64,000 bases of DNA. Source: Octopus bimaculoides. Lineage: Eukaryota. Position numbers and translations under genes: made by a program. The DNA is taken from contig NC_068983.1 of assembly GCF_001194135.2 (NCBI RefSeq), positions 23,220,412 through 23,284,411 on the forward strand, written 5' to 3'. The notes beneath the pieces were generated by a model. It made no database searches, was not told the DNA's origin, and worked only from the letters and a program-made list of their open reading frames with translations. Position 1 is the stretch's first letter, and each line of letters starts with the position of its first letter. Below are positions 12,360 to 62,924 of this stretch, in pieces.

Positions 12360-12512
12360 TTCAAAGAACTTGTATCAAAGAAATTCAATGCTCCTGAAGA
12401 ACAGCTCTGCCTCATTTTTGCTGGAAAAATCTTAAAGGATGCTGACACATTAAGCCAGCATGGAATACATGATGGTTTAACTGTTCATCTAGTTATCAAA
12501 TCCGCTAATAGA
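12360..12512 (+). CDS. UBQLN: Ubiquilin exon: UBL domain
   Basis: tttctatttag|TTC...AGA|gtaagt; [51 protein letters not shown]; phase 0/0. Confidence 0.96.
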
Positions 12513-18500: not shown

Positions 18501-21023
18501 AAAAGTTTTGATTGCCAAATGTGAGAGTCGTATTTGAATTGTAGTTAACTGACAAAACTACTGTGTATCATACTAAGTCTTGTACTGTCTGGTATATTGG
18601 ATAAAAGTATTGGAACCCTACATGCAAGGTTTGAGTTAAATTATACACGTACATGCACTTGAGCACAAGCACACATACATGGCATTGATGAGGGATGAAG
18701 ACAGCTTTTTTAAAATGTATTCTACTAAATATAAACACATTAGAAATGGGCTTGAAGAAGTATCAGCATTGCACACAGTGTGAATCGTGTTAGAAAATAA
18801 TTGCTATAAGTTGGTAATTCATTGAAACTAGACTTGGGTGTAAAACTTTAGTGTCACCTTCATAAATCTCTGTTTTGGATTAGAAAAAAAAAAAAAAAAT
18901 TTTGTAAGAGCTTTCAAATTCTGCCCCAAGCTGACTTGTGTAAATATACACGCCTATTCTACATTGTGTTTATGGATGAAATGCTTATAAAATGTTCAGT
19001 TCTTTTAATTATGTAATCAAAAGCTAAATAGTCTACAAATATATCAAATGAAACTATTTGACTTCCGCTTCACTGATTACTGAATTTAAGACATTATCTG
19101 CTCGAATTCTTCAAAATATATTGTGAAAGGATGGCTTGTGGCAGGTTTTCATATACCAAGAATGTATGAAAACTGGCAAAAGGAAAATTTATGTAAACTT
19201 GTCAAACAGTTTAGAAAACTGTTAAATCATGTTTAATGATATATGATTAAAGTGAATGTTAAAATGATGATAATTTCTATTTTTGTCTTTTAATTTTATT
19301 ACATTTTTGTTTTTAAATTTTAGGCTACTGCTGGTAACACTGGAGGAACCAATAGCAGTAACACTTGTCCAGCAGGAGCAGGAGGTACCAGTACAAGGCC
19401 AAGCAACAATACAAGCAGTGCTAGTGCTAATATCGGAGCCACTCCTTTTGGATTAGGAGGCTTAGGAGGTTTGGCTGGTCTTGGCAATTTAGGAATGGGG
19501 TCTGCAAATTTTATGGAAATGCAACAGAGAATGCAAAGAGAGGTGTGTATCTGTTGATGTTTTTCATTAGAAAAAAAAAGGACTTTATAAGCAACAAACT
19601 TTTGTGTATAATGATTTAATCATCTAAATGATTATTATTAATTATCTGTGATGCATGCTAATTAACTAATAGGTTTGTAATGTGGGATTGAAAGTTGCAT
19701 GAAGGACACCTTGTTGATCCTAGTTGAGCATCAAATGCTTTGGATATGTTACTTAATTGTAAATGCTTTCTGAAAAGAATATGAACTAATTTTTGAGAGT
19801 AAATGATGATGGTTGTGTGGTGATGGGCAGAAATGAATGCATGAAAGTAGCGAGTAATTTAGGTGATAATTTGTCATTGAGAAACAATCTTTTTATTTGA
19901 TTGAAGAAAAGGTTTTAGAAAGACAATGGGATTTAGGAATTGAAAAGGATAAATTGTAAAGTTAAGCAGAAATTTGAATAATAGTCTTGGTTAAGAAAGG
20001 AAGAAGTAGACTTTCCATAAGTCTTTTCAGAGACACTGAAGATTGTGTATTATAGAGATTGGGTTGCCCATGTTCAGTCCACTACAGGACAAAAGCCTCA
20101 GCATGTTCTCTCTACTACAGAATGGCTTGAGATCTTACTGGTTAGTGAGATAATGTGCTGGAATAAATTATATAGCATTGTTATGCTAGCAATGAAGTAA
20201 AGTCACTGCTTTTCATTAAAACCAAAAAGAAAGACATAAACAGTTATAAGTGATTATTTAAGTGGAACAGAGAGGGCCTGCTTTTAGTTGATCCCCACTG
20301 GTTGATCATTGGAAAGCTACAAGGCATCCCATCAGAAACATTAAGTTTCTCTAAAGAAAGTAAATATTGGTTTGTTCGCTGGGTTTACCAACTAATATAA
20401 TTTAGGTATCACCACTGTTAGTAATTTTCTCTTAATGCTGTCTGTGCTTATTTTGTTTTTCGTTTTTATAATAAATTATTTAGTAGGATATTCATAAAAT
20501 GAAATGCAAATTTTGTTTTAGGTTTTAACTGATTGCTGTATGTTTATGGTATCCTTTTTTTCTGTTGCATATATTTACAGTTAATGCAGAATCCCGAGAT
20601 GTTTCGTTCCATGATGGAAAACCCATTTGTTCAACAGATGATGTCTAACCCTGACATTATGCGGCGCTTAATCACCAGTAATCCTCAAATGAGAGAGCTT
20701 ATGGAAGTAAGCATTCTTTCTCAATTATACAACATTGTAGAGACTTTATAACAATCGTTCTGAATACATTCTAAAACATTGTTTTTATTCTCTTTAATAG
20801 TAAAGAGAACAACAAATTATATGTATACATATATATATATATCCTCATCGAAACAAAGAGAGAGAGAGAGGAAGAAAGATCAGAGTTAGGCTGGTCGAAA
20901 ACAGAACACGAGATGGAATTATTTTGGTGGGGAATATAGGGTAACATAATTGAAATAGGTGGATAATGAGATAGAATTGGGCACCGTGAAGCAGCAAAAA
21001 CTCAGGCTATATATATATGTATG

Positions 21024-24000: not shown

Positions 24001-27000
24001 GTGTGCATCACTAACATAAGTGTTTGTCCTGTACATGTAATTAAGGTTTTTTTATTGTATTTATGACTGTCATTATTTTGGAGTGGCTTATTTGAACAGT
24101 AAAAAGAAAATCGTTTATGACATTACATGGTTGACTTTTTTTTTTATTTCATAACAATGAAATTCCTGTTCAGCTTCATTTTTTTTTCCCAGTTATTTTT
24201 ACTGTGATGAATGTTTTTATCTTCAGACATTAGAGCTTGCAAGGAACCCAGCCATGTTGCAAGAGCTTATGAGAACTCAAGATCGAGCTATGAGTAATTT
24301 GGAAGTAAGTAGTTTCCATTTTATGACTAAATTTATTCAGGACTCTCCCCACTCCAATTTTGTATGCACCAATAAGTAGCTCTGAATAACTGATTTTAGG
24401 GTGAGATTTGAAATTTTCAAATGAGTCATCAATAGTCATTTGAAGAAAGAAAAACCCCCAAAATATAAAATACATAGCAAACAGCAAATTTAATGCCAAT
24501 TTTGAAGAAATGATAAAGCTATTTGACATACTGATGAAATAGTCATACCTCATAATACTCTTGATTGTTAAAATTATCAGTTGACAGCAAATTAGTTACA
24601 TTATATAATGGGGAAGGGCAATGAAGATTGTGATGTTGATGCCTTTTCCAAGAGGTTTGGTGGTACAAGTATGACTAAATTTAATTAGGATTTTTTTTTC
24701 CATAATTGTTTTTATAAGCACCAAGAAATCATCATCATCATCATCATCATCGTTTAACGTCCGCTTTCCATGCTAGCATGGGTTGGACGATTTGACTGAG
24801 GACTGGTGAAACTGGATGGCAACACCAGGCTCCAGTCTAATTTGGCAGAGTTTCTACAGCTGGATGCCCTTCCTAACGCCAACCACTCAGAGAGTGTAGT
24901 GGGTGCTTTTACGTGTCACCCGCATGAAAACGGCCACGCTCGAAATGGTGTCTTTTATGTGCCACCCGCACAAGCCAGTCCAGGGGCACTGGCAACGATC
25001 TCGCTCGAAAATCCTACGGGAGCCAGTCAGGCGGTACTNNNNNNNNNNNNNNNNNNNNNNNNNNNNNNNNNNNNNNNNNNNNNNNNNNNNNNNNNNNNNN
25101 NNNNNNNNNNNNNNNNNNNNNNNNNNNNNNNNNNNNNNNNNNNNNNNNNNNNNNNNNNNNNNNNNNNNNNNNNNNNNNNNNNNNNNNNNNNNNNNNNNNN
25201 NNNNNNNNNNNNNNNNNNNNNNNNNNNNNNNNNNNNNNNNNNNNNNNNNNNNNNNNNNNNNNNNNNNNNNNNNNNNNNNNNNNNNNNNNNNNNNNNNNNN
25301 NNNNNNNNNNNNNNNNNNNNNNNNNNNNNNNNNNNNNNNNNNNNNNNNNCTAATGTTCAGCTTTTCTCTCAAGATACTTACACTCTGACGGGTATTCACA
25401 TTGACATTACACATCCAACGGAGCATACTGGCTTCATTCCTTGCGAGCTTACGTATGTCCTCAGCAGTTACAGCCCATGTTTCACTGCCATATAGCATGG
25501 CTGTTCGTACGCATGCGTCATACAGTCTGCCTTTTACTCTGAGTGAGAGTCCCTTTGTCGCCAGCAGGGGTAAGAGCTCTCTAAACTTTGCCCAGGCTAT
25601 TCTTATTCTAGCAGCTACACTTTCAGCGCACCCACCCCCACTACTAACTTGGTCGCCCAGATAGCGGAAGCTATCGACTACCTCTAGTTTTTCACCCTGG
25701 AATGAGATAGCAGCGACGGATAATTGACTTTGATAGGAATTGTAATTAAAACCAAATACGGAGAGTTGGCACATTGTCAGATGTTTTATTTTATACTGTG
25801 TACATCTTATAGAGTTTCTAACTATGCCTTTTCTACAGATCGAGCAGGGCCATCTACCTGAAGGGGTTTGTGTTTTGTCCACCTTCCTACTTATTAGGAC
25901 TTTGGTTTTAGCTAGGTTTACTCTAAGGCCCTTCAATTCTAGTCCTTGCTTCCACACCTGAAATTTCTCCTTTAGTTCTGATAGTGACTCAGCAATTAGA
26001 GCAAGGTCATCAGCATAGAGGAGTTCCCAGGGGCATCCTGTCTTGAATTCCTGTGTTATTGCCTGGAGTACTATGATAACTAGGAGGGGGTTGAGGACAG
26101 AACCTTGGTGGACCCCAACCTCTACCCGGAATTCTTCACTGTACTCGTTTTCAACCCTCACCTGATAGCGTCTCTGTACATGGCTTGCACAGCTCTCACT
26201 AACCATTCTTCTATCCCTAGTTTCCTCATTGACCACCAGATAAGGGATCAGGGGACCCTGTCAAAGGCTTTCTCCATGTCAACGAAAGCCAGGTACAGCA
26301 GTTTATCTTTGGCTAGGTATTTGTCCTGCAGCTGTTTTACCAGAAATATAGCATCAGTGGTGCTTTTCCCTGTCTGAACCCAAACTGCATCTCATCTAAA
26401 CTGACTCTCTCCCTAATTAGTTGGGCTATGACCCTCTCCGTGGCTTTCATTACCTGATCTAACAACTTGATACTTCTGTAAAACCGATTCCTTATGGGAT
26501 TTCTCAATCAAATTGCCTGCGACCCATTTCAGCCAAACGTTTACCAATTGCAACGGATTTCGCTCAAATTTGTGCGTGAAAAAAAATAATTTAGTTGTAT
26601 TTTTGTATTGTATAATATAAGAAATGGTCAGTGCAAGTTAGTGTAGCATTTATTATTATCAGATATTTTTAGCTAAATTTTGTTAATCTAATTGTTCTAT
26701 TAACTTGGTTTTCTTCTTTTTTAAAGAGTATTCCAGGAGGTTTTAATGCTCTGCAGCGAATGTACCGTGATATCCAAGAGCCTATGATGAATGCTGCACA
26801 GGAAGGGTTTGGCTCTAACCCATTTGTCTCTTTGGTATCTAACTCTAGTGGTAAGTTAATATCAATAAAAAAAAAAAACATTTTTTTTTTTTACTTTATC
26901 ATGTGCTACTAATACTGGTATGATATAAGGCAGCGAGCTGGCAGAATCATAAGCACACTGGGCAAAATGCTTAGTTGCATTTCATCCACCTGTACATTCC

Positions 27001-36000: not shown

Positions 36001-39000
36001 GATTTCAAAATATTACAAATGATTGTAAAGAATCCACTTATTATAACAGTAAATCGATCTCCGTTAGCTATGGAAATAAGTATTCCAGTTGTCCTGTCAG
36101 TTGAACTGTGTACTTATTGAATTATAATGCAAGTGGTTGAATATTCAACAGACAGTTGTACTTCTAATGTAATTTTCAAGCAGAGTCAACATGATACAAT
36201 GTGTCACAAGGTTGACCTTTTGAATTACTGGTACAGTCCAGCATGCATGCTGCCAAAGTTTTCATCTACCCAACTTCACTCACAAGGCTATGGGTAAAAG
36301 ATATTTTCCTTAGATGCTATACTGTTGGGTCAAACTCTGGACCTTATGATTTTGAAGCAAACTATTATACCACCTGGCTGTAACTCCTTACCTACATAAA
36401 ACACCACAATATCTAGGTGCCATGCAGTGGGACTGAATCCTGAACCATGTGGTTGGGAAGCAAGCTTTTTACCACACAGCCATGCCTGTACCTATACTGA
36501 AACTTTTTTTAATGTTTCCATTGAAAATATATTGATTTTATTTTTTTCTTACAGTTTAACTGGTCTTTCAATTCCTACTACCAGTAATACAAGCACTGGT
36601 AGTACTGATTCTACTACAACCACAGCCTCCTCCACCGCCTCCACTACCACCACCACTACTTCTACAGAAGCCACCAACACATCCGCTACTGCTGGCTCTG
36701 CGGTGAATTCATCTGACAAGCCGGCTACGACTGCTGGTGAGAACACCTCCTCCTCTCCCGCCACCACAACTTCTACCACATCATCTACTACTCCTAATGT
36801 AACTGGTGGCACCAATACCACAGCCAGCGGGGACTCTAACCCTCTCGGTGGTAATACCAGTGCTGATGCATTCAGTAATTTGATGGCCCAAATGGTACAG
36901 ATGATGGCCAGTGGTCAAATGGGAAGTAATCCAATGACTAGTGGTTTACTCGGCACAGGACAAATGGTAGGTGTTCTATATTTTATTTCTTGGAGTGATC
37001 TTGAGTGTTGTGTGTTAATTGTTGGCATTACCCATAATTACCTCCCTTTCATTGACATTATATGCATACATGGCTATATTTTATAATGTATATATGCTTT
37101 GCAGCCATGTAATTTTGGGTTCTTCCTGCTGTGCAACATTATGCGGCTCAGAACCTTTTTCCCTTTATTTACCGTATGTGGTCTCAGACCCATCATGAAG
37201 CAATGTATGTAGATGACATTCCATGTCCCAATCCATAGGTTCCAGCCTGTCTTGGTTTTAAAATGTGGACAGTGCTATGCATCCATGAGCCCACATCTGA
37301 CTTACATGGGCATATTGGTGCAGGGTTGATCCTAACCTAGACGCCAATCCCAGTTGGGGAATTGCAAAAGGCACTGGAACCTGCCAGACTTCAGCTGAGC
37401 AAGCCCAAGAGGCACATGAATATGATCAAGATGAAAGGCAAAGTTGACCTTGATGGAATTTGAACTCAGAACGTAAAGGGAGACGAAATACTACTAAGTA
37501 TTTCGCTTGGCGTGCTAACGTTTCTGCCAGCTCACTGCCTTAAGAGACCACTTTATTGCAAGCATTCAGACTAGGTCTCTTGTCTGCAAACAAAAACTCT
37601 ACTTCCCTTCTCACCAAACTTGGAGGCCTTGAGAAAGAACATAGAAACTGCTCATCCTTCTCTGACTCAGCATCATCATTTAGCATCTGCTTTCTATGCT
37701 GACATGGGTTAGATAGTTTGACAGAAACTGGTAAGCTGAAGAGCTGCACCAAGTTCCAGTCTGATTTGGCATGGTTTCTACAGCTGGATGTCCTTCCTAA
37801 TGCCAACCACTCCAAGAGTGCTTTTTATGTGCCACCAGCACAAGTGCCAGTTACATAATACTGGCATTGGCTACAACTACAAATTTACTTGCTAAGTCTT
37901 CTCAAGCATGGCATATTACCAAAAGTCTCGGTCATTTGTCATCGCCTCCGTGAGGCCCAATGTTTGAAGGGTGCTTTTCGCATGCCACCGACACAAGTGC
38001 CAGTTACATGACACCAGCATCAGCCATGATTACGATTTCACTTAAAAAACCACCTCATCTCATCTAGGTCGTCCCATAGGATGCCCCTTTTTTAGGGTTT
38101 TCGGTTGTGCATGTTATAGGAGTCACAGGGCGCTGTTCCATGTGGTCCTGCAGTTTCCATCTTACCGAACAAAACTTTCTCATTCACTGCCATATCCTGC
38201 CTTCCTTTATCTTGTTCATTCTTGCTTTTTTTTTTACAATTTTTTTTCTTTTGTTACATTTTATATATCTCTTTTTCTAGGTTCAACCTCCTGATCAGCG
38301 CTTTGGACCTCAATTGGAACAGCTTGCAGCAATGGGATTTGTGGATCGAGAAGCTAATATTAGAGGTAGTGTTTCTAAGTGTACTTCTGATAGTTTTGTT
38401 GCAAAAAGTATATATCTACATGACTTTAGTTTTGGTTCTGAAATTTCTAGATGGTTAACTAAATTTGAAGCTTAATGTAAATCTAAGTTAACCTAGTTTT
38501 CCAAATTCAAATACCAGTGTGGATTTGATCCCTTCATTTATTATTTAAACTTAATTTGTATTTATATTGATTTTTCTTGACTAAATGGCACAGTGTTTAT
38601 TTTTCAATCAGTTTGATATCAAGATCATTGAGCAAGTTCACTAGTCAGCATATTGCCATTTATCCAAGTTTTTCATTGTCTACTCTGTAAGGTGTCACAT
38701 TCTGAGACCTTATCTCAATTTGATGATAGTGGGTGGGAATTGCTCTTAAGCAAATGAATACATAGATATGATTCTGTATTTTTTCTTTGAGTGGTTGGCA
38801 TTAGGAAGAGCATCCAGCTGTTGGAACTCTGCCAAATCAGATTGGAGCCTGGTGTTGCCATCCGGTTTCACCAGTCCTCAGTCAAATCGTCCAACCCATG
38901 CTAGCATGGAAAGCGGACGTTAAACGATGATGATGACGATGATAAGGACAATGGCAAAGCAGAGATTTTAGTAAGGCCAGACATGTTACACTAGTTGAGT

Positions 39001-52348: not shown

Positions 52349-55300
52349 GGTGCGATGGGTAAATTGTCACTTTTATATTTTTAATTTCGTGCATGTGCAT
52401 TGTTTTTGATTTTGTTGACTGCACAGTATTGTAGGGTCAGTTGGGCACCATCTGTGAGAAAAACAGCACCATGATGCAACTCATTCTACCAGAAATTTGG
52501 AAACGTGCTGTACTGCTTGGCATTCAGAGTGGAAGCTCCAGTACGAACATTTCAGAGTGTTTGGGTGTCAGTCTGAGGACATGTGCTGAGAGTGATAAAA
52601 ATCAAGCATCCAGTCAACATCATGGTGTTTGGAGTGATCACTAGTGATGGCAATGTTATGCCTCCCTCTTGCCACATGGCCTCAGACTCAACAGGAAGAC
52701 CTACATGAAGTGCTTGAAGGAGGTAGTGTTGCCCTGGGTCAAGAGGGTGGCTGATGGAAGACTCTATATCTGGCAACAAGACTCAGCACCATGCTACACA
52801 AGCAGGAGAACCTAGTCATGGCTGTCAGACAATTTCTGCGATCATATCAGCCTTAACATCTGGCCACCTAACTCCCCAGACTGCAACTTCCTTGAATATT
52901 ATGTGCAGTTGAGCGAGAGACCAACAAAACTCCTTGTAGCACCACAGATGAACTGAAGGCAAGGATTATGGTATCATTCACCAACTTAAACAAGGAGACC
53001 ATCCAGAAGAGCTGCAGGAGATTCTGAAGTTACCTGGAGGTCATGGTTGAAACCAATGGTGATTTTATTGAATAAATTTACTCTTTAGTATTTCAAGATA
53101 TTTTTATGTAATTTTGGTATATATATATATACCAAATGTTAAAATGAGATGTCAGTGTTATTTTCATTTTTGCATACTTTAGATGACAGTTTATTCACTG
53201 CACCCTGTGTATGTATATATATATATATATATTTATATAAAATATTCTTTTCTACTCTAGGCACAAGGCCTGAAATTTTGGGGGACGGGACAGTCGATTA
53301 AATCTACCCAGTATGCAACTGGTACTTAATTTATCAACCCCGAATGGATGGAAGGCAAAGTCGACCTCAGTGGAATTTGAATTCTGGACATAAAGACAGA
53401 ACAAATATCATAAACATAAAGGGGACAGACAAAGGGATTAAGTCGATTACATCGATCCCAGTGCGTAACTGGTATTTAATTTATCGACCCCGAACGGATG
53501 AAAGGCAAAGTCGACCTCGGCGGAATTTGAACTCAGAATGTGACGGCAGACGAAATACTGCTAAGCATTTCGCCCGGCATGCTAACGTTTCTGCCTTAAT
53601 ATATAAAATATATTAATGACTGATAAGTGACGAAGAGTTCGTGATTTGTTTTCTGTTCGTCTGTGTATTTAGTATATGTTCTTTTTTTTATTTAATACAC
53701 GTTTTTTTAAAATTATGTATACATATATATATATATATACAGGTATGTCATATTTTCCGTTTGTTTTCTTCTTGTTATTTANNNNNNNNNNNNNNNNNNN
53801 NNNNNNNNNNNNNNNNNNNNNNNNNNNNNNNNNNNNNNNNNNNNNNNNNNNNNNNNNNNNNNNNNNNNNNNNNNNNNNNNNNNNNNNNNNNNNNNNNNNN
53901 NNNNNNNNNNNNNNNNNNNNNNNNNNNNNNNNNNNNNNNNNNNNNNNNNNNNNNNNNNNNNNNNNNNNNNNNNNNNNNNNNNNNNNNNNNNNNNNNNNNN
54001 NNNNNNNNNNNNNNNNNNNNNNNNNNNNNNNNNNNNNNNNNNNNNNNNNNNNNNNNNNNNNNNNNNNNNNNNNNNNNNNNNNNNNNNNNNNNNNNNNNNN
54101 NNNNNNNNNNNNNNNNNNNNNNNNNNNNNNNNNNNNNNNNNNNNNNNNNNNNNNNNNNNNNNNNNNNNNNNNNNNNNNNNNNNNNCACGCTCGAAATGGT
54201 GTCTTTTATGTGCCACCCGCACAAGCCAGTCCAGGGGCACTGGCAACGATCTCGCTCGAAAATCCTACAGGAGCCAGTCAGGCGGTACTGGCAACGGCCA
54301 CGCTCAAAATGGTGCATCTCATGTGCCACCCGCACAAGAACCAGTCCAGGGGCACTGGCAACGATCTTACTTGGCTTGCCGGGTCTTCTCATCATGCATT
54401 ATATAAAATATCTTGAATTCAAGAATCCACATGCATTCTGTAGAATAAATTAACTGGAAGTAACTAATACAGCAATGAAGTGCCTCAGAGACTGGTGTGA
54501 AGAAGGGAAGAATTTATCTTCAGAGCAGAGACCTGGTCCAGATATTTGCATTAGAGTGAACTCTGCTGAAGTTTCTCACCAGGATAGTGTTAAAGTGGGC
54601 AATAGTTATTGTGAACAATTTGCTTTACAGTGTATCAGACAAGCTTCTGCACTGTTACTATTAATCTAATTTCAGTCACAAGTCTTTGATAGAAGCCTTT
54701 ACTCTCTTTAACTTGTTTCAGTCATTTGACTGTGGCCATGCTGGAGTACTGCCTTTAGTCGAGCAAATCAACCCCGGGACTTACTCTTTGTAAGCCTAGT
54801 ACTTATTCTATCGGTCTCTTTTGCCGAACCGCTAAGTGACGGGGACATAAACACACCAGCATCGATTGTCAAGCAATGCTAGGGGGACAAACACAGACAC
54901 ACAAGCATACACACACACACACACACATATATATACATATATACGACAGGCTTCTTTCAGTTTCCGCCTACCAAATCCACTCACAAGACTATGGCCAGCC
55001 CGAGGCTATAGTAGAAGACACTTGCCCAAGATGCCACGCAGTGGGACTGCACCCGGAACCATGTGGTTGGTAAGCAAGCTACTTACCACACAGCCACTCC
55101 TGCGCTTTTGTTCAAATTTATATGCTGTGGATTTGAAAACACAATCGTATGACTGCAGCATGAGCTTGTTAACTGCACAGTCATATGTGTCTGAGAATAC
55201 TATAAATGTGAAAGGAAACTTACCAGTCTGTTGGGATAGATGCGGTAAATCATTTTATTGACTTTCTGGATAAATCTGCGAGGTAGTTTGCTTTCCAAAT

Positions 55301-58300
55301 CGGCATGTAATTCTACCTGTAAAATGGATTTTAAAATATTCAAGTAAATAAAGGATTAACCATATGGAACATTATAACAAAAGATATGTGACTTTGAAAA
55401 TAATTTAGACTTAAAAGGTTTTAAATAATAATTGTTGTGTAGGTATGAGTGAATAAATGAATGTTTGAACCAAACGAGATTTCTGTTTACACATTAAAGT
55501 ATAATTAATTCCATTATAAGAATACAAAGTATTCTAGAAAAAGTAGTTGTATGCTGTCAACTTAATGTGACAGTCCCATGAAGGGAATAATACTACTGCT
55601 ATTTAGCCCTAGGAAGCAGCACTGCTTCCTGTCGGCCTTGACACATTTCCTGTGTCCTTATGTTTACAAGAGGGAGACAAGCACCTCCACTTAGCTAAGC
55701 CTACATCCAGAGACATGTTTCTGTGTCTTTGCTTGTCATCAGTCTAGAGTAGCAATGGCCTGCTAGTTGGAGATGCTTGTGAAGCTCTTGTAAACATATA
55801 ATAATTCTAGTGACACATATTCACTGATTTCAAAAATAGAAATGATACATTTCTAAATCTCTCAGAGAGATTTATGCAGTAGTGATGCGATAAAGTTGTT
55901 GTATGCTGTCAACTTAATGTGACAATCCCATGAAAGGAATAATACTACTGCTATTTAGCCCTAGGAAGCAGCACCACTTCCACTGCATAAATCTCTCTGA
56001 AAGATTTAGAAATGTATTATTTCTATTTTTGAAATCAGTGAATGTGTTTCACTAGAATTATTATATGTTTACAAGAGCTTGACACGCATCTCCAACTAGC
56101 AGGCCATTGCTACTCCAGACTGATGATGAGCAAAGACTCAGAAACATGTCTCTGGATGCAGGTTTAGCAAAGTGGAGGTGCTTGTCTTCCCCTTGTAAAC
56201 ACAAGGACATAGGAAATGTGTCAAGGCCGACAGGAAGCGGTGCTGCTTTCTAGAGCTAAACAGCAGTAGTATTATTCCCTTCATGGGACTGTCACATTAA
56301 GTTGATAGCATACAACTACTTTATTGCATCATGACTGCATAAATCTGTCTGAGAGATTTAGAAATGTATTATTTCTATAAAGTATTCTCGCTTCGCTCTA
56401 AAATACATTTTGTAGTGGGGATGTGTGGCAGAAGTTGTAAGTTATAATTATCTTAGAGCACAGCTAGAAATAATTTGTACATTGTAATTCTATTTATATA
56501 AGTGTATGTGTGTGTTTGTGTGCATAGTTCTAGTCTTCCTGTAGCACTCTGTGTATGTTTATGTGTAATGTATATGAGAGAGGAGAGTGGGAAGGTAGAT
56601 ACATTAAGAGACCAAATGAGGCATAAAAATGTACCGTTGAAAGACAGAAAAATAGATCAGTTAGTGCGAGTGTATATTTATGAGTAAAGAAGGGAGTTGT
56701 AGAAATAAAAAAATAATATTACTAGTGAAAAAGCATATAAGAGAAAAAGGTATATTTGGGGAGAGAGAAAGCTTTAGGTAATATAATATCAATAAATTCA
56801 CTTAACCTGGATTTTGGTGAAAACAAAAATTTATCTCAAAATATTTTGGTTAGATAAAACACCTGATATTTAGTAGACATACACACAAACTCACACATAA
56901 ACATAAAGAAGAGAAAGAGTCTAACATCAATTTGTTTACATTCGACTGAACAGACCTATATTTATAAACCCCCCACCTGTGATTATTCTCTCTCAAGATG
57001 GTTGTAAGATTTGAGGTACATTTGGTTGTTATTTCAAAGCAGTTCAACGACCATGTAGAGACTCTATCATTGATTCAGTTTGTACTCTGTTGTATCCAGT
57101 GATACATCATTTGGTTCTGAGAGAACAAATGTATGCAACAGCTTTCATGCTTATTTTATGATTCAGAAACATTGCTACAGCATGTGTTGACCAGTGCAGT
57201 TCTTGAGTTTTCCCCCACTTTTGGGTCCTAAAGTCTGTACAGGCTTATATAGGTGACCCAAAAGTGCTGCCCTCATAAAAGCATCAACTGGGGTGGACAG
57301 ACCTTTTGTGTACCACCTAGCTAAATTACTGCAAGGATTTTATCGTTCTTCTTAATTGGTTAAGAATATTTATTGTGTTAGAAGGCTCAGTTGTGTTTAT
57401 GACATGCATACCTCTCCCAGAAGCATTTAGTGTGTAAGTGAAGTGAAATAACATCAACTGGGACTTAGACTAGATCACAGCAGTGTTTACTTCTTACTCT
57501 GTACTTATGACGTGTTTTCAGGAAGAAAAAGGTAATTATAACATACATGCTTCTCCTTAGAGCATTTACTATGTAAGTGAAATAAATGTTAGCCAAAAGA
57601 CATGGCTGTCACGTGTGAGTATGGGCTGCTTTCTCTGACTGTTTTCAGTGCCCATTTAGCCATGAGTAAACATTAGTTTGCCTCCTGGCACTACCCATCC
57701 TTGATTTAGCAGAACAATGAGGATGTAACAGTTGAAAGGAAAGAGGGCTGTACTAGCCCTAGCTGGGGCTCATTTTCAGCTGAGTAAACCGGAACAGCAT
57801 GAAATGAAGTGCATTTGTTCTCAAAAACATAATTTGTTGGCTGGTTGAACCTACACCTTAAGATCACGTAACCAACTCACTTAAACACATGGTTTGATGT
57901 TCACTTCTAATTCTATGGGTTATAATCCATTCAGTCATAAAGATATCACTGAAGACTTCATTGTCATCGTTATGCAGGGTAAGTCAGCATGGCAGAGGGA
58001 TCAACCTTCTCCAAACTGTACTCACAAGAGAAGTTCAACTCAGTGCTGAGAGTTAATGAAATTCTTATCAATTTTATAGACCTTAAAGGGGTAAGTTGCT
58101 CCTACACAACAGAATATATTTACAACCTTGTGCACTGGGTTAGTTAAGAGTTTTGGTTATATACAAATCATGGCTGTTGTTGTTTAAGCTCCAGCCCAGC
58201 CCTAATTGAGTATATCTATAATGAAAGGCATTGTAATTGTTATATACTCACTTCTACCCAAAACTTGTATATTTACTAACTAACTGGCGCTTTGTTGGTT

Positions 58301-61300
58301 ATGGTGATGAAGGCTCCAGCTGGTCTGATTAACAGAACAGCCTGCTCTTGAAATTAACATGCAAATGGCTGAGCACTCCACAGACAAATGTACCCTTAAT
58401 GTAGTTCTTAGGGAGATTCAGCATGACACAGAGTGTGACAAGAGATGGCTGGCTATTTGGAATACAGGTACTACTCACTTTTGTCAGCTGTATTGACTGA
58501 AGCAATGTGAAAGTATTTTGTTCAAGGACGTGTCGCTGGGAATTGATCTCATGTCCTTATGATCATAAGCTGAATACCCTGACTACTAAGCCATGTGCCT
58601 TCACTATTCATATATTTAGGTTTATATCATGCAATGTGATCATCTTTTTTAAGATGGTAGGATGTGACATGAAGGAAATTTGGTTGCTAGGCTTGCTTGT
58701 CAGTTCAATAGTGAGAGAATATTAACTGCTAGCAACTTAATCATCTAATGACTTGTGTCCCCACTCATGGTGACTTGTTGTGTACCATTAGCAATATCTA
58801 TAAAGTGCCACTTCGTAATCAATCATACTCCATTCCTCCATTACCAAACTGAAGCTTTGTGCCTATGTCAGAAAACAATATCTACCTGCATTGTCAATCT
58901 TTTTAATCGAGCATCTCTGATGACAGCATCAATATTGCCAACAGCCAGACCGATCTGAAAACGCAAAAGAAAAAATGATATTAAAAAGAAAGGGGTCCCT
59001 TATCTGCTTTCCATACTCTTGTACCCCTTTTATTACCATATTTGTGATGAAATATACTGCTTTTGTTGCAATTAATTTTGAAAATAATCTTTTACTTGTT
59101 TCAGTCATTAATCTGCAGCTATACTGGGGCACTGCCTAGAAGAATTTTTTAGTTGAATGGATTGACTCAAGTACTTATTTTTTTAAAGCTTGGTACTCAT
59201 TTTATCAGTTTCCTTTGCCAAACTGCTAAGTTATAGGGATGTAAACATACCAACACCAGCTGTCAAGTGGTGATGGTGAACAGACACCGGCAGAAAGACT
59301 CACACATATATCTTTTTCAGTTTTGTTGTGTGGACGCCCCCAGGCAATAAGTAGGCTTGTCCAATACGTATAAATAGTGGACATGACAGCTAGACGGAAA
59401 GCGTTGTGTAGAGTGAGCTGGGGCCATCGGTAGACTAGACATAGAGTTCTGTAGTGTCAAGTCGTTGGAAGTGAGAGTTGAGTAGAGGTCATCCGCACAT
59501 GCAATATAACAAGTTTCCATCTACCAAATCCATTCACAAGGCTTTGGTCGGCTCCAGAAACCATGTGGACGGGAAGCAAACTTACCACACAACCACTCAC
59601 GCACTTATATGACCACTCCAGTGCCTATAATGAAGAATTTCGTAAAATAACTCAGTCATTATTAAGTTGAAGTTTGAACGTAAACTAACATGAAATTTTG
59701 ATGGAAGGTTTTAATTTAAATCACTTCAGAAAAGCCAATTTGTATCATAAAACTAAATCTTGCGTAGGTTGGTATCAAAAGGGTTGATTTTTAAACTGAA
59801 GATATATGTGTGTGTGTATCATGGTTTAAGGTTTAATATTACTGTCTCTTCTATCCTTGTGCCAAAATTTGAAACCAATATTACTTTCATTGCTCTCTTA
59901 CTTTTGTCTGCAAGGTACTGGTTAGGTCACTTAAATCTGTCAACCTTGGCACCTAACCAGTACTGGAACATGACAAAGTGCTGAAAAACAAACTTTAACC
60001 CTTTAGCATTCAGATCATTCTCTCAAATGTAATGCATAATATTCACATAGTTTTGAATTAAGCATGCATTATCTTATAGCTTCAAGATTTCAATGATGAG
60101 ATTGTTTATTTTCGCAATGTCATAATTGGGTAGATGTGAGAGGCCAAATCTAGCTGGTTTCAACATAAAACAAGTAGAATATAGAAAGAAAACTTTAAAG
60201 TCAGCTTGTTTTATTTTTGAAGAGAGAAGAAGAGAGAGAGAAATGCTATATCTACTTAATGAGAAATACTATAGGAGCCATCTAACAAATATTGTTAAAA
60301 AGATCAATGTTTCAACAAAATATGCATTGAATTTATAACGGGGATGAAGATATTTTTTAAATAAATATATAGTTAGTTAAGAAGAAGAAATGTATTTACC
60401 AGCAAATTCATAAGCATGATGGGTGTGAATAACATGAACATGGCCAACATTAGAATACTGACATTGCCGAAATGTAATGTGTATGGATCATCATCTGTAA
60501 ATGGCTCATTGAAATTATCCATAAACTCTGGTTCCAGAATCATCATTCCAACTCTTAAGATAGACAAGGCTGGACTACGGTGAGCATGGGATTCCTATAA
60601 AAGAAATAATTGTTTTTACTTATATAAATCAAACCCCTTAATGTGTCAGCATCATTATTATTATTATCATTAATGTGGTGAGCTGGCAGAATCATTAGCA
60701 TGCCAGACAAAATGCTTAGCAGCATTTCATCTGTCCTTATGTTCTGAGTTCAAATTCTGTCAAGGTTGACTTTGCCTTTCATCCTTTCAAGATCAATATA
60801 TTAAGTACCAGTGAAACACTGGGGTCGATATAATTGACTAACCCTCCTCCCCTAAAATTTCAGGTCTTGTACCTTTAGCAGAAAGGATTATTATTATTAT
60901 TATTATTATTATTATTGGCATATACGCCCATTACCCATTTTGTCATCTTCGATCTCATTGTTTGTTTATATCTGATGTTTCAGATATGAAACATCATAAC
61001 AATGCTGACTATAATTTCTATAGAAAATCTGTAGAGATAACTTTAACACATGATTTAAGTGCTAACACAGCAGTACGCAGTATTGACATATAAAAATGTT
61101 TAATATACTTTGTAGCATATTATGGTTGCATAATGCAATACTGTGTGCTAAAAAGTCATTAATATTTACATACCAGCTTCCAGGAATGTGTTCAATATGT
61201 AAATTGGTATATCCAATAACATTACACCACTGTATTTAGTGGCTAATTAAGCAATGAGTTCGTCAATGATTAATGGGTTAGATGGGTGCTGAGGAAGGAG

Positions 61301-61483
61301 CAAAAACTCCTGAAATATGGCATATACGCCCATTAATCATTTTCCCATCTTTTTCATCTTTTCCATCTTTAATCTCATTGACACAATAGTACATGATATT
61401 GATTTATAAAAATGTTTGATATACTTTGTCTTTGTAGCATATTATGGTTACATAACAAAATACCATATGCCTAAAAGTTGTTA

Positions 61484-61536
<53 letters not shown>

Positions 61537-62594
61537 CATCATTATTATTATTCAGTGAGAGAGAAGTGCATGCCATCAAAGTGTCACTGGGGTAAAATAT
61601 ATGAAGCCCAGTATACCCATCATGACTAACCGTCTGCTAAGGGTACACCAGGCACATGCATCACAACCATATGTGTGCAACATGGTGATCTCATATCAAG
61701 ATAAATAGTGCATGACCTTGCAGGTGGGACCCAGTTAGAATTTTCTTCAGGTCAAGTAACCTATCCCGCTCAAAAGGTCCTTGAATAAGGGTTGTTTAAG
61801 GATGTTGAACGAAACACCCATGTTTCCAGAGGTGAATTATTCAAACTCCAAAGAATTCCTCTCAACACATGGCTTTGATGCTCTCGCACTACTTCTGCTC
61901 ATGATCAGAGATGCACATATCGTCAACCACTAAGGGTCATGCTCAACTGGTTAAGGTCAAACAACTGACAAGAAAATCTGTGGTATTGAGCAGAATATTT
62001 GCTGTAACCCATCTTTTATACCAATACAAAACAATGTACATGATAACACTTTCAATCAGTTAAGATCAGAAGCCATGAGAACCAGTGCCTGGTGCTGCAT
62101 CAGGGCATTTATGATTATTATTATTATTATTATATTTGGTAGTTTCAGGCTAATTTCTACTGCATCACCTGCTACGCCACCGTGTTGAGGTCAACTCATT
62201 CAACTAAAAATTGTTCAAGGTGGTGCCCCAGTCCGATGATTGAAACAAATAAAAGATATCAGAAGAAATACCACTTAGCATTTTGTCCAACACTCAAATG
62301 ATTCTGCCAGCTCGTTGCCTTAATTATAAAAACAACAACTTCCATGCTATAATATTTAAGCTTAATAATCCAATGCAGAAGGACAATAATATACGAAGAC
62401 TGTATGTATTAAAAAAACAAAAAAAGTTATGATATAACAAATTGTTAAGGATTCACTGATTTACCTCTTTTGCCATGACAACGTAGAAACCCATACCAAA
62501 GGCAATGAAAAGAATACTGTAGATACATATTGCCTGGATTAAAGTTCTCAGCACTTCAAGACACATGACCACGTGAAGACCAAAGATCTCAATC
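48687..62594 (-). CDS. TRPA1: TRPA1-like ion channel, 3' part (S4-S5 linker to C-terminus); upstream exons lie beyond the window end
   Basis: Six in-phase GT-AG exons on the - strand: 62594-62465, 60594-60400, 58954-58886, 55316-55224, 50450-50335 and 48942-48687. The spliced peptide has TRPA hallmarks PIMLMNLLIGLAVG, LKRLTMQVELHxxLExKLP, YPN and the LLRLIVRKMDISTEDD coiled coil. A small extra exon between 55224 and 50450 cannot be excluded because two N gaps lie there. Confidence 0.9.
49548..49938 (+). mobile_element. tRNA-headed SINE family D, nested in an old family C copy
   Basis: Colinear with 45341-45697; TSD ACTTTATAATA at 49535-45 and 49937-47. Confidence 0.9.
50335..50450 (-). CDS. 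TRPA1: TRPA1-like exon: pre-coiled-coil region
   Basis: tttcttgtag|AAA...AAAAG|gtaatg; KIVNEDADAGQLDAKLASLGRSIAQNAYLYDEMHQQKK; phase 0/2 matches the last exon. Confidence 0.85.
50593..50787. mobile_element. Second TTAA-type MITE family (other copies about 10540-10745, 12834-13055, 59996-60160)
   Basis: Shared internal block CATTCTAAAAATAAACAATCACATC...AAAATCTCA.AGCTA; ends resemble TTAA-CCCTTTAG / CTAAAGGG-TTAA. Confidence 0.7.
52346..53207 (+). mobile_element. maT-like (37-residue catalytic spacing) Tc1/mariner element, internally deleted
   Basis: TIRs CAGGGTGC...GCACCCTG starting in a (TA)n run. Remnants HPVNIMVFGVITSDG and WQQDSAPCYTSRRT*...IWPPNSPDCNFLEYY; 37 codons separate D (52780-82) and E (52894-96). 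Confidence 0.88.
54186..54390 (-). mobile_element. RTE 3' UTR modules next to an N gap
   Basis: Near-identical to 24935-25038 and 8027-8200. Confidence 0.88.
54703..55105 (-). mobile_element. tRNA-headed SINE family B, full length
   Basis: Colinear with 8441-8833. Confidence 0.88.
55224..55316 (-). CDS. TRPA1: TRPA1-like exon
   Basis: cattttacag|GTA...CTG|gtaagt; VELHADLESKLPRRFIQKVNKMIYRIYPNRL. Confidence 0.92.
55706..55748 (-). ncRNA. Hammerhead ribozyme family 1, degenerate stem II
   Basis: - strand reads TCTAGA CTGATGA caagcaaagacaca GAAACATGTC TCTGGA. Core and stem I are kept but stem II cannot pair. Confidence 0.65.
56107..56170 (+). ncRNA. Type I minimal hammerhead ribozyme (family 1, canonical core)
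   Basis: Stem I TCCAGA 56114-19 / TCTGGA 56151-56; core CTGATGA 56120-26; stem II TGAG/CTCA with loop CAAAGA; GAAA 56141-44; palindromic stem III ACATGT; GTC cleavage site after 56150; distal stem TTGCTA 56107-12 / TAGCAA 56165-70. Confidence 0.85.
58290..58610 (-). mobile_element. Old SINE sharing the family D central block but with a different head
   Basis: Reverse complement of AAGGGTACA...GTCTGTGGAGTGCTCAGCCA...GCAGGCTGTTC at about 58340-58400. Confidence 0.6.
58886..58954 (-). CDS. TRPA1: TRPA1-like exon: S6 end and TRP-like helix
   Basis: gttttcag|ATC...CAG|gtagat; IGLAVGNIDAVIRDARLKRLTMQ. Confidence 0.94.
60400..60594 (-). CDS. TRPA1: TRPA1-like exon: pore helices, filter and S6
   Basis: cttttatag|GAA...CTG|gtaaat; ESHAHRSPALSILRVGMMILEPEFMDNFNEPFTDDDPYTLHFGNVSILMLAMFMLFTPIMLMNLL. 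Confidence 0.93.
60916..61481 (+). mobile_element. Hammerhead-bearing partial tandem (about 402-bp unit), family 2
   Basis: GGCATATACGCCCATTA recurs at 60917 and 61319; ATAAAAATGTTT...TTTGTAGCATATTATGGTT recurs at about 61090 and 61406; the hammerhead spans the unit junction; both ends are bounded by (ATT)n. Confidence 0.7.
61265..61341 (+). ncRNA. Type I hammerhead ribozyme (family 2, canonical core)
   Basis: Stem I ATGGGTG 61282-88 / CGCCCAT 61327-33; core CTGAGGA 61289-95; stem II AGGAG/CTCCT with loop CAAAAA; GAAA 61312-15; near-palindromic stem III ATATG-G-CATAT; ATA cleavage site after 61326; distal stem ATGATTA 61266-72 / TAATCAT 61334-40. Confidence 0.82.
61553..62110. repeat. Interspersed repeat bounded by (ATT)n tracts, probably a LINE 3' UTR
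   Basis: GC-richer 560-bp block between long (ATT)n runs, with no ORF. Family assignment is from recollection only. Confidence 0.4.
62465..62594 (-). CDS. TRPA1: TRPA1-like exon: S4-S5 linker and S5
   Basis: gttttag|G ATT GAG...GAG|gtaa on the - strand; IEIFGLHVVMCLEVLRTLIQAICIYSILFIAFGMGFYVVMAKE. Confidence 0.92.
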
Positions 62595-62619
62595 CTAAAA
62601 CAAAGGAGGAAGTTAGAAT

Positions 62620-62924
62620 GTCATCATCATCATCATCATCATCATTATAATCACCATCACCACCACAATCATCATTGTCAACGTTGTCCTTGTCGCTATT
62701 GTCATCATCTTCCTCAAAGAAAGTGTCGTCATCTTCCACCTCCTCCTCCCCTCACCACCACCATCCCCACCACCACCATCATTGTCTTCGTTAATATTGT
62801 CATTGTTATTGTCATCGTCATTACCCTCATAGAAATTGTTGTCCCACTCCTCCTCTTCCTCCTCTTCCTCTTCCTCCTCTTCCTCTTCCTCCTCCTCTTC
62901 CTCCTCTTCCTCCTCTTCCCCTCT

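What the first reader, a model, noticed from the sequence alone, without database searches (positions are those of the whole stretch)
56107..56170. Canonical minimal type I hammerhead ribozyme inside a 352-bp tandem unit in a TRPA1-like intron
Seen: TCCAGA-CTGATGA-TGAG/CAAAGA/CTCA-GAAA-CATGTC-TCTGGA gives a 6-bp stem I, the full CUGAUGA/GAAA core, a 4-bp stem II and a GUC site (cut after 56150). A distal TTGCTA/TAGCAA stem lies beyond an internal loop. Stem III is only the palindrome ACATGT. Established: minimal type I hammerheads with a palindromic stem III act as dimers and occur in Penelope pseudo-LTRs and in metazoan retrozymes, short tandem units that yield circular RNAs. Inference: this is a retrozyme/PLE-derived family in a cephalopod. 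I do not know whether it has been described.
Basis: partly seen in the sequence, partly recalled or inferred. Interest (0 to 1): 0.9.

Follow-up and report, generated by a model that had tools for sequence, protein, structure and literature searches.

The report
Hammerhead ribozyme in retrozyme-type mobile element
The motif is a real hammerhead self-cleaving RNA carried by a short, non-coding, many-thousand-copy retroelement of a known kind (animal "retrozyme", copied by Penelope-like machinery) that landed once in an intron of a TRPA1-like gene.

Summary
The hammerhead is at the stated coordinates: stem I 56114-19/56151-56, CUGAUGA, a 4-bp stem II, GAAA, the ACAUGU palindrome, and GUC with the cut after 56150. 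My descriptor gives 0.001 hits per shuffled window.

Raw genomic reads show several thousand copies. The core is invariant. Three double changes keep pairing: two in stem I, and ACAUGU to ACUAGU in the palindrome that forms helix III only in a dimer.

The "352-bp tandem unit" is only partly right. The 843-bp insert (55536-56378) has two head-to-head arms of 1.13 and 1.26 units of a 352-nt period. It is flanked by a 10-bp target duplication. One related species has the empty site and two have the insert.

Each arm ends at one of two family-wide 3' ends, 56 nt apart. Inverted arms, partial tandems and an optional tail are the published footprint of Penelope-like insertion, so this is a non-autonomous non-LTR retrozyme.

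Caveats:
- Rfam gives only a sub-threshold HH9 match (26.4 bits against a gathering score of 52).
- Most copies have a C·A mismatch at the base of stem II.
- The minus-strand copy is decayed.
- Cleavage and circles are untested.
- The organism could not be named.

It is a new member of a known kind, of moderate interest. A second, unrelated hammerhead candidate lies at 61281-61334.

The parts
56114..56156 (+). Hammerhead ribozyme motif of the right arm. Stem I 56114-19/56151-56, core CUGAUGA 56120-26, stem II 56127-30/56137-40, loop II CAAAGA 56131-36, GAAA 56141-44, helix III/palindrome ACAUGU 56144-49, cleavage triplet GUC 56148-50. Predicted cut between 56150 and 56151.
   Evidence: Sequence. 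Descriptor hit against 0.001 expected per window. Sub-threshold Rfam HH9 match over the full model. Core invariant and stems covarying in about 4300 genomic reads.
56066..56201 (+). Long imperfect hairpin that closes the hammerhead. It includes the UAC bulge 56111-13 and distal pairings (TTGCTA/TAGCAA or GGCC/GGUU).
   Evidence: Inverted repeat I5. Minimum free energy -53.4 kcal/mol, z -5.07, with stems I and II formed in the predicted fold.
55706..55748 (-). Second hammerhead copy, in the left arm and sense to the host gene. The core, GAAA, GUC and stem I (one G.U) are kept. Stem II is destroyed (CAAG/CACA, only 1 of 4 pairs).
   Evidence: found only with stem II relaxed to 1/4. Its two stem II changes are private to this copy: family reads carry the other base at 55724 (95%) and 55734 (about 70%).
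55982..56377 (+). Right arm: 44 nt of unit end followed by one full 352-nt unit (56026-56377). It ends at family terminus T2.
   Evidence: Direct repeat D2, spacing 352. Genomic reads leave the family sequence at 56025 and 56377 into unrelated AT-rich DNA.
55541..55981 (-). Left arm: 145 nt of unit end followed by 297 nt of the next unit, in inverted orientation. It ends at family terminus T1. Positions 55536-55540 are a few unassigned bases next to the target duplication.
   Evidence: D1 and I1/I2. T1 seen as contig ends at 55540/55541 in three other species, and as read ends at the equivalent 56321 in this species.
56322..56377 (+). Optional 56-nt 'tail' between the two alternative 3' termini T1 (56321) and T2 (56377).
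   Evidence: About 530 reads stop at each terminus in two DNA runs. Compare the Penelope 'tail' between two reverse-transcription start sites (PMC11167929).
55526..55535 (.). Left copy of the 10-bp target site duplication AAAGTATTCT.
   Evidence: Sequence. A contig from organism E joins 55536 to 56390, skipping 853 nt, which equals the 843-nt element plus 10 nt.
56379..56388 (.). Right copy of the target site duplication AAAGTATTCT.
   Evidence: Same as above.
55317..58885 (-). Host intron of a TRPA1-like gene. The upstream exon is about 58954-58886 (IGLAVGNIDAVIRDARLKRLTMQ). The downstream exon starts at 55316 (VELHADLESKLPRRF...). The 3' splice site AG at 55318-55317 lies 219 nt from the element.
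   Evidence: Open frames. The concatenated exons match TRPA1 structures at E 5e-29.

Best explanation
The 843-bp block 55536-56378 is one insertion of a short (352-nt unit, 40% GC), non-coding retroelement that carries a type I hammerhead ribozyme. It is an animal 'non-LTR retrozyme', that is, a non-autonomous passenger of Penelope-like elements. Shown here: the motif is a structurally constrained hammerhead across a family of several thousand copies. The family has two fixed 3' ends (T1, T2) 56 nt apart and frequent head-to-tail junctions. This block arrived in one event with a 10-bp target duplication, after one related species had split off. Inferred life cycle: multimeric transcripts pair two hammerheads through the ACAUGU palindrome, forming a 6-bp intermolecular helix III, and cut after GUC. 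The 352-nt monomers are probably circularised by a host tRNA ligase. A Penelope-type reverse transcriptase/endonuclease nicks both strands of an AT-rich target. It starts DNA synthesis at internal sites of the RNA (T2 on one strand, T1 on the other) and copies more than one unit length from a circular or multimeric template. The two cDNAs meet head to head at 55981|55982. The copy at 56114-56156 still has all the elements of an active ribozyme. The minus-strand copy has lost stem II. Neither has a known role for the host gene.
For: Motif and chance. Family size: genomic depth is about 2300 per run over the hammerhead, against about 0.3-1 on the flanks. Thousands of copies are also present in four other species. 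Constraint (about 4300 reads): CUGAUGA, GAAA and GUC vary by at most 3%, and the 3% is at the free position N7. C15-G55 becomes U-A (45%/42%). A19-U51 becomes G-C (46%/42%). A46,U47 becomes U46,A47 (16.5%/17%), which keeps the palindrome. The other frequent changes are in loop II and at 10.1/11.1. The same pattern is seen in RNA reads. Rfam HH9 aligns full length and matches the UAC bulge and the 6-nt loop II. The hammerhead stems form in the minimum-free-energy fold of a stable hairpin. Insertion: target duplication; empty site in organism E, filled site in B and D. Termini T1/T2 and head-to-tail junctions. Literature: canonical metazoan architecture and action as dimers (PMC4209133, PMC7229834); retrozyme definition (150-450 bp units, low GC, target duplications longer than 4 bp; PMC7229834); Penelope tandem/inverted insertions and tail (PMC8557442); two internal start sites, nicking and extension of both strands, ATT/AT-rich targets (PMC11167929); retrozymes as Penelope derivatives (bioRxiv 10.64898/2026.07.22.740005).
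Against: No Rfam family reaches its gathering score. 72% of genomic copies have C at 10.1 opposite A at 11.1, so the conserved G10.1-C11.1 pair is absent and stem II is effectively 3 bp. This copy's U-A pair looks like CpG decay rather than selection. The compensatory changes are inferred from matching frequencies, not from linked sites in single molecules. RNA-seq shows no pile-up of ends or drop in depth at 56150|56151, and gives no evidence that can tell circles from tandem transcripts. Reads from this very locus are almost absent. The tail is 56 nt, not the published 30-40. No autonomous Penelope element sharing this sequence was found, because the genome could not be searched. Thermodynamic co-folding does not choose the ACAUGU duplex.
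Confidence: 0.8

Rival explanations
1. The 352-nt unit is not a separate non-autonomous family. It is the pseudo-LTR of an autonomous Penelope-like element, and this locus is a solo or partial pseudo-LTR remnant.
For: Penelope pseudo-LTRs carry hammerheads and form the same tandem/inverted structures (PMC4209133, PMC8557442). In RNA, many reads continue from the unit end into one fixed sequence, AAACATTTTTCTGATG.... Active Penelope families exist in octopus genomes (PMC13282606), if that is the host.
Against: In genomic DNA the reads leaving T1 and T2 run into unrelated sequence (consensus agreement 0.38-0.44) or into the start of another unit. They do not run into a common internal or coding sequence. 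The fixed RNA continuation has agreement near 1 and so looks like a single expressed locus. Both arms here were copied from unit-to-unit templates. The unit has no open frame longer than 56 codons.
Confidence: 0.1
2. The family is an ordinary short interspersed repeat. The hammerhead-like motif is a catalytically dead relic, conserved only because the copies are young.
For: Most sites of the segment vary by less than 3%, so low core variation alone proves little. There is a C.A mismatch at the base of stem II in most copies. The Rfam score is sub-threshold. There are no cleavage-site ends in RNA-seq.
Against: Six of the nine frequent variant sites inside the motif form three pairing-preserving doublets, including a palindrome-preserving one. 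None of the nine falls in the core. Reads from diverged subfamilies still match the hammerhead segment while the flanks 5' of 56109 have diverged (depth about 180 rising to about 1700). A mismatch at the base of helix II is tolerated in the axolotl retrozyme hammerhead that cleaves as a dimer (PMC7229834).
Confidence: 0.08
3. The block is a foldback or MITE-type DNA transposon: long terminal inverted repeats plus a target duplication.
For: 341-nt arms at 94% complementarity and a 10-bp flanking duplication.
Against: The two outer ends are not equivalent (T1 against T2). Each arm is more than one unit of a direct period. Genome-wide, copies end at T1 or T2 in single orientation, and 'opposite strand' junctions are rare.
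Confidence: 0.02

Closest known systems
Metazoan non-LTR retrozymes (Cervera and de la Pena 2020, PMC7229834; coral, mussel and axolotl families)
   Same: Type I hammerhead. Non-coding unit within 150-450 nt (here 352). GC below 45% (here 39.8%). Target duplication longer than 4 bp (here 10). Head-to-tail repeats in the genome. Thousands of copies. Family RNA present.
   Different: At this locus there are only 1.13 and 1.26 units per arm, and the arms are inverted. Unit-length linear or circular RNA and self-cleavage are not shown. Most copies have C.A instead of G-C at 10.1-11.1. The host taxon appears not to be covered in the papers I could search.
Amphibian satellite 2 / axolotl HHR_Amex1 and Amex2 hammerheads, which act as dimers
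   Same: Very short helix III with a palindromic loop, implying an intermolecular helix III. Unit size of about 330-350 nt. Amex2 also has a mismatch (U.U) at the base of helix II.
   Different: Sequence is unrelated. Here helix III is 2 bp plus a 2-nt loop. Dimer dependence is inferred only from the palindrome and its AU-to-UA covariation.
Penelope-like elements and their pseudo-LTR hammerheads (PMC4209133, PMC8557442, PMC11167929)
   Same: Partial tandem plus an inverted 5'-truncated copy. Two alternative 3' ends (an optional tail). AT-rich target containing ATT. Hammerhead located 170-230 nt upstream of the 3' ends.
   Different: No reverse transcriptase/GIY-YIG ORF. The hammerhead has the canonical architecture (helix I 6 bp, helix II 4 bp), not the Penelope min-HHR (helix II 7-8 bp, helix I 4-5 bp, extra base before 10.1). 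The tail is 56 nt rather than 30-40.
Rfam Hammerhead_HH9 (RF02275), a conserved amniote intronic type I hammerhead
   Same: Best-scoring Rfam model. Full-length alignment with the UAC bulge, 6-bp stem I, 4-bp stem II and a CAAANA loop.
   Different: 26.4 bits against a gathering score of 52. Helix III hairpin is missing. U-A instead of G-C at the base of stem II. This is a multicopy mobile element, not a single conserved locus.

Membership tests
Hammerhead ribozyme, canonical metazoan type I | Catalytic core C3 U4 G5 A6 N7 G8 A9 ... G12 A13 A14 and a U16.1-H17 cleavage site | tested here: met
   CUGAUGA, GAAA and GUC are present. They vary by at most 3% across about 4300 genomic reads, and only at N7.
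Hammerhead ribozyme, canonical metazoan type I | Open-ended helix I of about 6 bp supported by covariation | tested here: met
   UCCAGA/UCUGGA. C-G to U-A (45%/42%) and A-U to G-C (46%/42%). Linkage within single molecules was not observed directly.
Hammerhead ribozyme, canonical metazoan type I | Helix II of about 4 bp with a conserved G10.1-C11.1 base pair | tested here: not met
   This copy has U-A. 72% of genomic copies have C10.1 opposite A11.1 (88% A), leaving 3 bp, GAG/CUC.
Hammerhead ribozyme, canonical metazoan type I | Helix III of 1-2 bp capped by a 2-4 nt palindromic loop (dimer-forming) | tested here: met
   A-U and C-G plus loop AU, read as ACAUGU. The ACUAGU variant, in about 17% of copies, keeps the palindrome.
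Hammerhead ribozyme, canonical metazoan type I | Loop 1 / loop 2 tertiary contact nucleotides | tested here: inconclusive
   The UAC bulge (conserved in at least 97% of reads) and the 6-nt loop CAAAGA align to the HH9 consensus. There is no structural or functional test.
Hammerhead ribozyme, canonical metazoan type I | Score at or above the Rfam gathering threshold | tested here: not met
   No hit at gathering score. HH9 scores 26.4 bits against 52.
Hammerhead ribozyme, canonical metazoan type I | Site-specific self-cleavage | not testable with these tools
   RNA-seq shows no excess of ends at 56150|56151. That is not decisive for 5'-OH and cyclic-phosphate ends.
Non-LTR retrozyme | Short non-coding unit (150-450 nt), low GC, no LTR/PBS/PPT, no ORF | tested here: met
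   352 nt and 39.8% GC. Longest open frame is 56 codons. No tRNA-like part. PBS and PPT were not searched for specifically.
Non-LTR retrozyme | Occurs as head-to-tail repeats (dimers to multimers) | tested here: inconclusive
   At this locus there are only partial repeats (TRF negative). Genome-wide, about a fifth to a third of T2 ends continue into a new unit. Array lengths are unknown.
Non-LTR retrozyme | Retrotransposed: target site duplication longer than 4 bp | tested here: met
   10-bp duplication and an empty site in a related species.
Non-LTR retrozyme | Expressed as unit-length linear and circular RNA | not testable with these tools
   Family RNA reads exist. Short reads cannot separate circles from tandem transcripts.
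Penelope-like element (mobilisation footprint) | Partial tandem plus an adjacent inverted 5'-truncated copy | tested here: met
   Arms of 1.13 and 1.26 units, head to head, within one target duplication.
Penelope-like element (mobilisation footprint) | Two alternative 3' ends, i.e. an optional tail | tested here: met
   T1 at 56321 and T2 at 56377, each with about 530 read ends, and contig ends in three other species. The length is 56 nt against the published 30-40.
Penelope-like element (mobilisation footprint) | Reverse transcriptase plus GIY-YIG endonuclease ORF, or sequence identity to the pseudo-LTR of such an element in the same genome | not tested
   The unit has no ORF. The genome could not be searched. 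A protein search with an open frame of the unit found nothing.

The most novel reading that the evidence does not exclude
This dated, empty-site-verified insertion may be a natural footprint of the Penelope mechanism acting on a retrozyme RNA. Both target strands would prime synthesis, each from a different internal start site (T1, T2). Each would copy more than one unit length from a circular or multimeric template. In addition, a hammerhead whose majority form has a C.A pair at 10.1-11.1 could be a conditionally active (pH- or protein-assisted) ribozyme.
Probability: 0.3. Interest if true: 0.6.

Novelty: new member of a known kind. Interest (0 to 1): 0.4.

Why it matters
Self-cleaving hammerheads in animal genomes are now understood mainly as parts of retrozymes and Penelope-like elements, so one more family is expected rather than surprising.

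The locus is useful for two reasons. First, the insertion is clean and datable, because a related species keeps the empty site. Second, its anatomy matches what was seen in vitro for a Penelope enzyme: two internal start sites and extension from both nicked strands. That gives genomic support, outside vertebrates, for the proposal that retrozymes are Penelope passengers.

The insertion also puts a roughly 340-bp near-perfect inverted repeat 219 nt upstream of a 3' splice site of a TRPA1-like gene. This could form double-stranded RNA in the pre-mRNA, which is a testable side effect.

Tried and rejected
- Rfam at gathering score on the whole window and at E<=10 on 1.1 kb: no hammerhead. The only strong rows were microRNA-precursor models matching the long inverted repeat, which I rejected as hairpin artefacts.
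- Tandem Repeats Finder: nothing.
- Idea that stem II was ancestrally CGAG/CUCG and decayed at CpG on both sides: rejected. Position 56140 is A in 88% and never G at 2% or more. Only the 5' CpG (positions 27-28) fits decay.
Exons were found from open frames instead.
- Exact-pattern scans of the metagenome and viral collections for the family consensus: 0 hits.
- Protein search with an open frame across the hammerhead, hoping to pull family copies from assemblies: no hits.
- Protein searches with TRPA1-like and ubiquilin-like exons to name the organism: only distant named hits, sea cucumber at 46% and clam at 73%.
- Thermodynamic co-folding of two hammerhead segments: it prefers other intermolecular pairs, which is uninformative for a tertiary-structure ribozyme.
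- 'Goes back about 350' joints in DNA reads: rejected as evidence of arrays. They arise from the internal 93-nt repeat of the reference itself.
- tRNA-derived SINE: no tRNA-like part.
Full report

- Distal TTGCTA: 56107-12.
- Stem I: TCCAGA 56114-19 with TCTGGA 56151-56.
- Core: CTGATGA 56120-26.
- Stem II: TGAG 56127-30 with CTCA 56137-40, loop CAAAGA.
- GAAA: 56141-44.
- Palindrome ACATGT: 56144-49.
- GTC: 56148-50, so the predicted cut is after 56150.
- Distal TAGCAA: 56165-70.

I wrote a descriptor requiring 6/6 stem I pairs, CUGANGA, 4/4 stem II pairs, a 4-8 nt loop, GAAA, and U followed by H within 10 nt. It hits this site. It gave 1 hit in 1000 dinucleotide-preserving shuffles of the whole window, both strands. 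The motif is therefore far beyond chance for one window.

Rfam is weak support only.
- Nothing reached gathering score on the window.
- No hammerhead appeared at E<=10 on 55400-56500.
- When only 56095-56185 is searched, Hammerhead_HH9 (RF02275) aligns over its full 77 positions at 26.4 bits, against a gathering score of 52 (E 3.6e-5 for that small search).
- The alignment matches the UAC bulge 5' of stem I, stem I, the core, a 4-bp stem II and a 6-nt CAAANA loop. It loses score because the helix III hairpin is absent and the base pair of stem II is not G-C.

**2. What the surroundings really are**

There is no tandem array; Tandem Repeats Finder reports nothing. The repeat finder shows the following.
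- Direct repeats spaced 352 nt: 55537-55629 with 55889-55981, and 55982-56026 with 56334-56378.
- Inverted repeats: 55540-55880 against 55982-56322 (341 nt, 94%), and 55836-55981 against 56233-56378.

The block is therefore two arms that meet head to head at 55981|55982. The right arm (+, 55982-56377) is 44 nt of unit end plus one full unit (56026-56377). The left arm (-, 55981 down to 55541) is 145 nt of unit end plus 297 nt of the next unit.

Each arm carries one hammerhead. The left-arm copy (55706-55748, minus strand) keeps the core, GAAA, GUC and stem I. Its stem II reads CAAG/CACA, with 1 of 4 pairs. The descriptor finds it only when stem II is relaxed.

The block is flanked by AAAGTATTCT at 55526-35 and 56379-88.

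**3. One insertion event, verified by an empty site**

Contigs from runs of other species were laid on 55100-56800.
- Organism B (contigs 24 and 31) crosses both flank-element junctions.
- Organism D (contigs 9 and 15) does the same.
- Organism E has a contig that joins 55536 directly to 56390. It skips 853 nt, which is the 843-nt block plus one copy of the 10-bp duplication.

The whole inverted structure therefore arrived at once and created the duplication. It did so after E split from the lineage of A, B and D. Flank divergence between A and the others is about 3.5-4%. The two arms differ by 6%.

**4. The family**

Raw genomic reads of the same species (X44, X45; about 1.9 Gb read from each) give depth 0-1.2 on the unique flanks. 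Over the hammerhead they give about 2300 per run at 80% likeness or better. That means several thousand copies. Summed contig depths indicate thousands of copies in four other species as well.

Copy number is uneven along the unit.
- Highest: 56167-56300.
- Intermediate: the hammerhead.
- Lowest: 56026-56100.

Subfamilies therefore share the hammerhead and the roughly 170 nt downstream of it.

The unit is 352 nt and 39.8% GC. As a circle it folds to -96.8 kcal/mol (z -2.6). It has no tRNA-like part and no open frame above 56 codons. The hammerhead sits at the tip of a 136-nt hairpin with -53.4 kcal/mol and z -5.07, and stems I and II form in the minimum-energy fold.

**5. Structural constraint on the hammerhead**

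In about 4300 genomic reads the following sites show no variant at 2% or more, except T>A 3% at the free position N7 and G>A 2% at G8:
- CUGAUGA
- GAAA
- U and C of the GUC triplet

The frequent variants are these.
- 56115 C>T 45% with 56155 G>A 42% (C-G to U-A).
- 56119 A>G 46% with 56151 T>C 42% (A-U to G-C).
- 56146 A>T 16.5% with 56147 T>A 17%, turning ACAUGU into ACUAGU, which is still a palindrome.
- 56134 A>T 24%, in loop II.
- 56127 T>C 72%.
- 56140 A>T 12%.

Six of these nine sites thus form three pairing-preserving doublets, and none falls in the core. The palindrome-preserving doublet can only be explained by pairing between two molecules, since positions 46 and 47 are adjacent. This supports a dimeric helix III. 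RNA reads show the same pattern.

Two cautions apply. The tables give site frequencies, not linkage. The family is young enough that low variation alone is weak evidence.

One real departure from the canonical motif remains. Most copies have C10.1 opposite A11.1, so the conserved G10.1-C11.1 pair (PMC4209133) is absent. The U-A pair of this copy is most simply a CpG-to-TpG change. A mismatch at the base of helix II is known in the axolotl Amex2 retrozyme hammerhead, which still cleaves as a dimer (PMC7229834).

**6. Termini and mechanism**

In genomic reads of species A, about 530 reads leave the family sequence at 56321. Another 530 or so leave at 56377, running into unrelated AT-rich sequence (consensus agreement 0.38-0.44). 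The equivalent position 56025 behaves the same way.

About a fifth to a third of the reads reaching T2 continue into TTTTGAAATCAG..., the start of another unit.

Contigs of three other species end at the same two phases, 55540/41 and 55837 on the other strand. These independent contigs matter because X44 and X45 are proximity-ligation libraries with chimeric reads.

The family therefore has two alternative 3' ends 56 nt apart. At this locus the right arm ends at T2 and the left arm at T1.

The published footprint of Penelope-like elements has these features:
- partial tandems;
- an adjacent inverted 5'-truncated copy;
- an optional short tail (PMC8557442).

In vitro, a Penelope enzyme nicks and extends both strands. 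It prefers AT-rich/ATT sites and starts reverse transcription at two adjacent internal sites whose spacing is the tail (PMC11167929).

The simplest reading, which is inference, is that both nicked strands primed cDNA synthesis on unit-repeat RNA. Each cDNA ran for more than one unit (396 and 441 nt), so the template was a multimer or a circle. The two cDNAs were then joined in the middle.

Together with unit size, GC content, lack of coding capacity and a duplication longer than 4 bp, this matches the non-LTR retrozymes of Cervera and de la Pena (PMC7229834). It also matches the recent proposal that these are non-autonomous Penelope derivatives (bioRxiv 10.64898/2026.07.22.740005).

**7. Expression**

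Three RNA runs of species A give family reads at depth about 150 per 1.9 Gb over the hammerhead. Most are 90-95% like this copy, and 85% continue into other sequence, so they come from other loci. Flank depth is zero, so this locus is silent in those samples.

Single-locus joints appear with both mate orientations, so the libraries look unstranded. There is no excess of read ends and no dip at the cut site. This neither shows nor excludes cleavage.

Many RNA reads continue from the unit end into one fixed sequence, AAACATTTTTCTGATG..., with agreement up to 1.0. This is best read as one expressed locus.

**8. Host gene**

Open frames on the minus strand encode the following.

| Coordinates | Segment |
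|---|---|
| 62456-62620 | TRP channel S5 |
| 60376-60594 | pore and S6 |
| 58954-58886 | IGLAVGNID... |
| from 55316 down | VELHADLESKLPRRF... |
| about 48900 | coiled coil |

Joined together, four of these exons match TRPA1 structures at E 5e-29.

The element lies in the 3.6-kb intron 58885-55317, 219 nt from the 3' splice site. The intact hammerhead is antisense to the gene, and the sense-oriented copy is the decayed one. With so few cases this is only an anecdote. It does fit selection against active ribozymes in pre-mRNA, and the reported depletion of retrozymes from introns in frogs.

**9. Organism**

Run metadata are coded. Protein searches found only distant named relatives: sea cucumber TRPA1 at 46% and clam ubiquilin at 73%. 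'Cephalopod' is neither confirmed nor refuted.

In the searchable literature I found no paper that describes hammerheads or retrozymes in octopus or other cephalopods. Octopus genomes are reported to hold active Penelope families and hundreds of unclassified SINE families (PMC13282606).

**10. Verdict**

The feature is real and the mechanistic assignment is well supported. It is a new member of a known kind. Interest is moderate: no specialist would be surprised by the class, but the empty-site-verified, two-terminus, two-arm insertion is a neat natural footprint of the Penelope mechanism acting on a retrozyme.

Noticed in passing
window 61281-61334 (+), within 60916-61490: A second hammerhead candidate from a different sequence family. 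Stem I is GAUGGGUG/CGCCCAUU. The core is CUGAGGA. Stem II is AGGAG/CUCCU with loop CAAAAA, followed by GAAA. Helix III is AUAU[GGC]AUAU, with the cut after UA at 61326. It sits in a partial tandem of period about 316-322, bounded by (ATT)n on both sides, in the next intron of the same gene, and is again antisense. The strict descriptor gives 2 hits in the window against 1 in 1000 shuffles. There is no Rfam hit.
   Followed up: partly
window 55540-55880 paired with 55982-56322: The insertion creates a roughly 340-bp, 94% complementary inverted repeat inside the TRPA1-like pre-mRNA, 219 nt from a 3' splice site. This is a potential double-stranded RNA (editing or small-RNA) substrate. Rfam's microRNA-precursor models match it only as a generic long hairpin.
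   Followed up: no
window about 12360-37086 (+): Ubiquilin-like gene upstream of the TRPA1-like gene. Exons seen: UBL at 12360-12575, STI1-like at 20533-20748 and 36400-37083.
   Followed up: partly
window 24887-26236 (-): Non-LTR (LINE-type) reverse transcriptase fragment, interrupted by an assembly gap.
   Followed up: no
window 4467-4847, 7260-7634, 24806-25040, 54190-54400 and others: A repeat with a recurring open frame (...[29 protein letters not shown]...) occurs several times in both orientations, often next to runs of N.
   Followed up: no
window 56488-56531: A short TG-rich segment is also highly repeated in the genome: depth about 100-140 against about 1 on the flanks. In RNA it is joined to a family copy at another locus (joint 56515 to 55715).
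   Followed up: no
runs X44/X45 (not the window): Loose ends often read GGTTCGTCCATCGATCGATGGACGAACC, a palindromic linker. These 'genomic other' libraries are therefore proximity-ligation data with chimeric reads, and read-end evidence from them needs the independent contig support that one search gives.
   Followed up: partly
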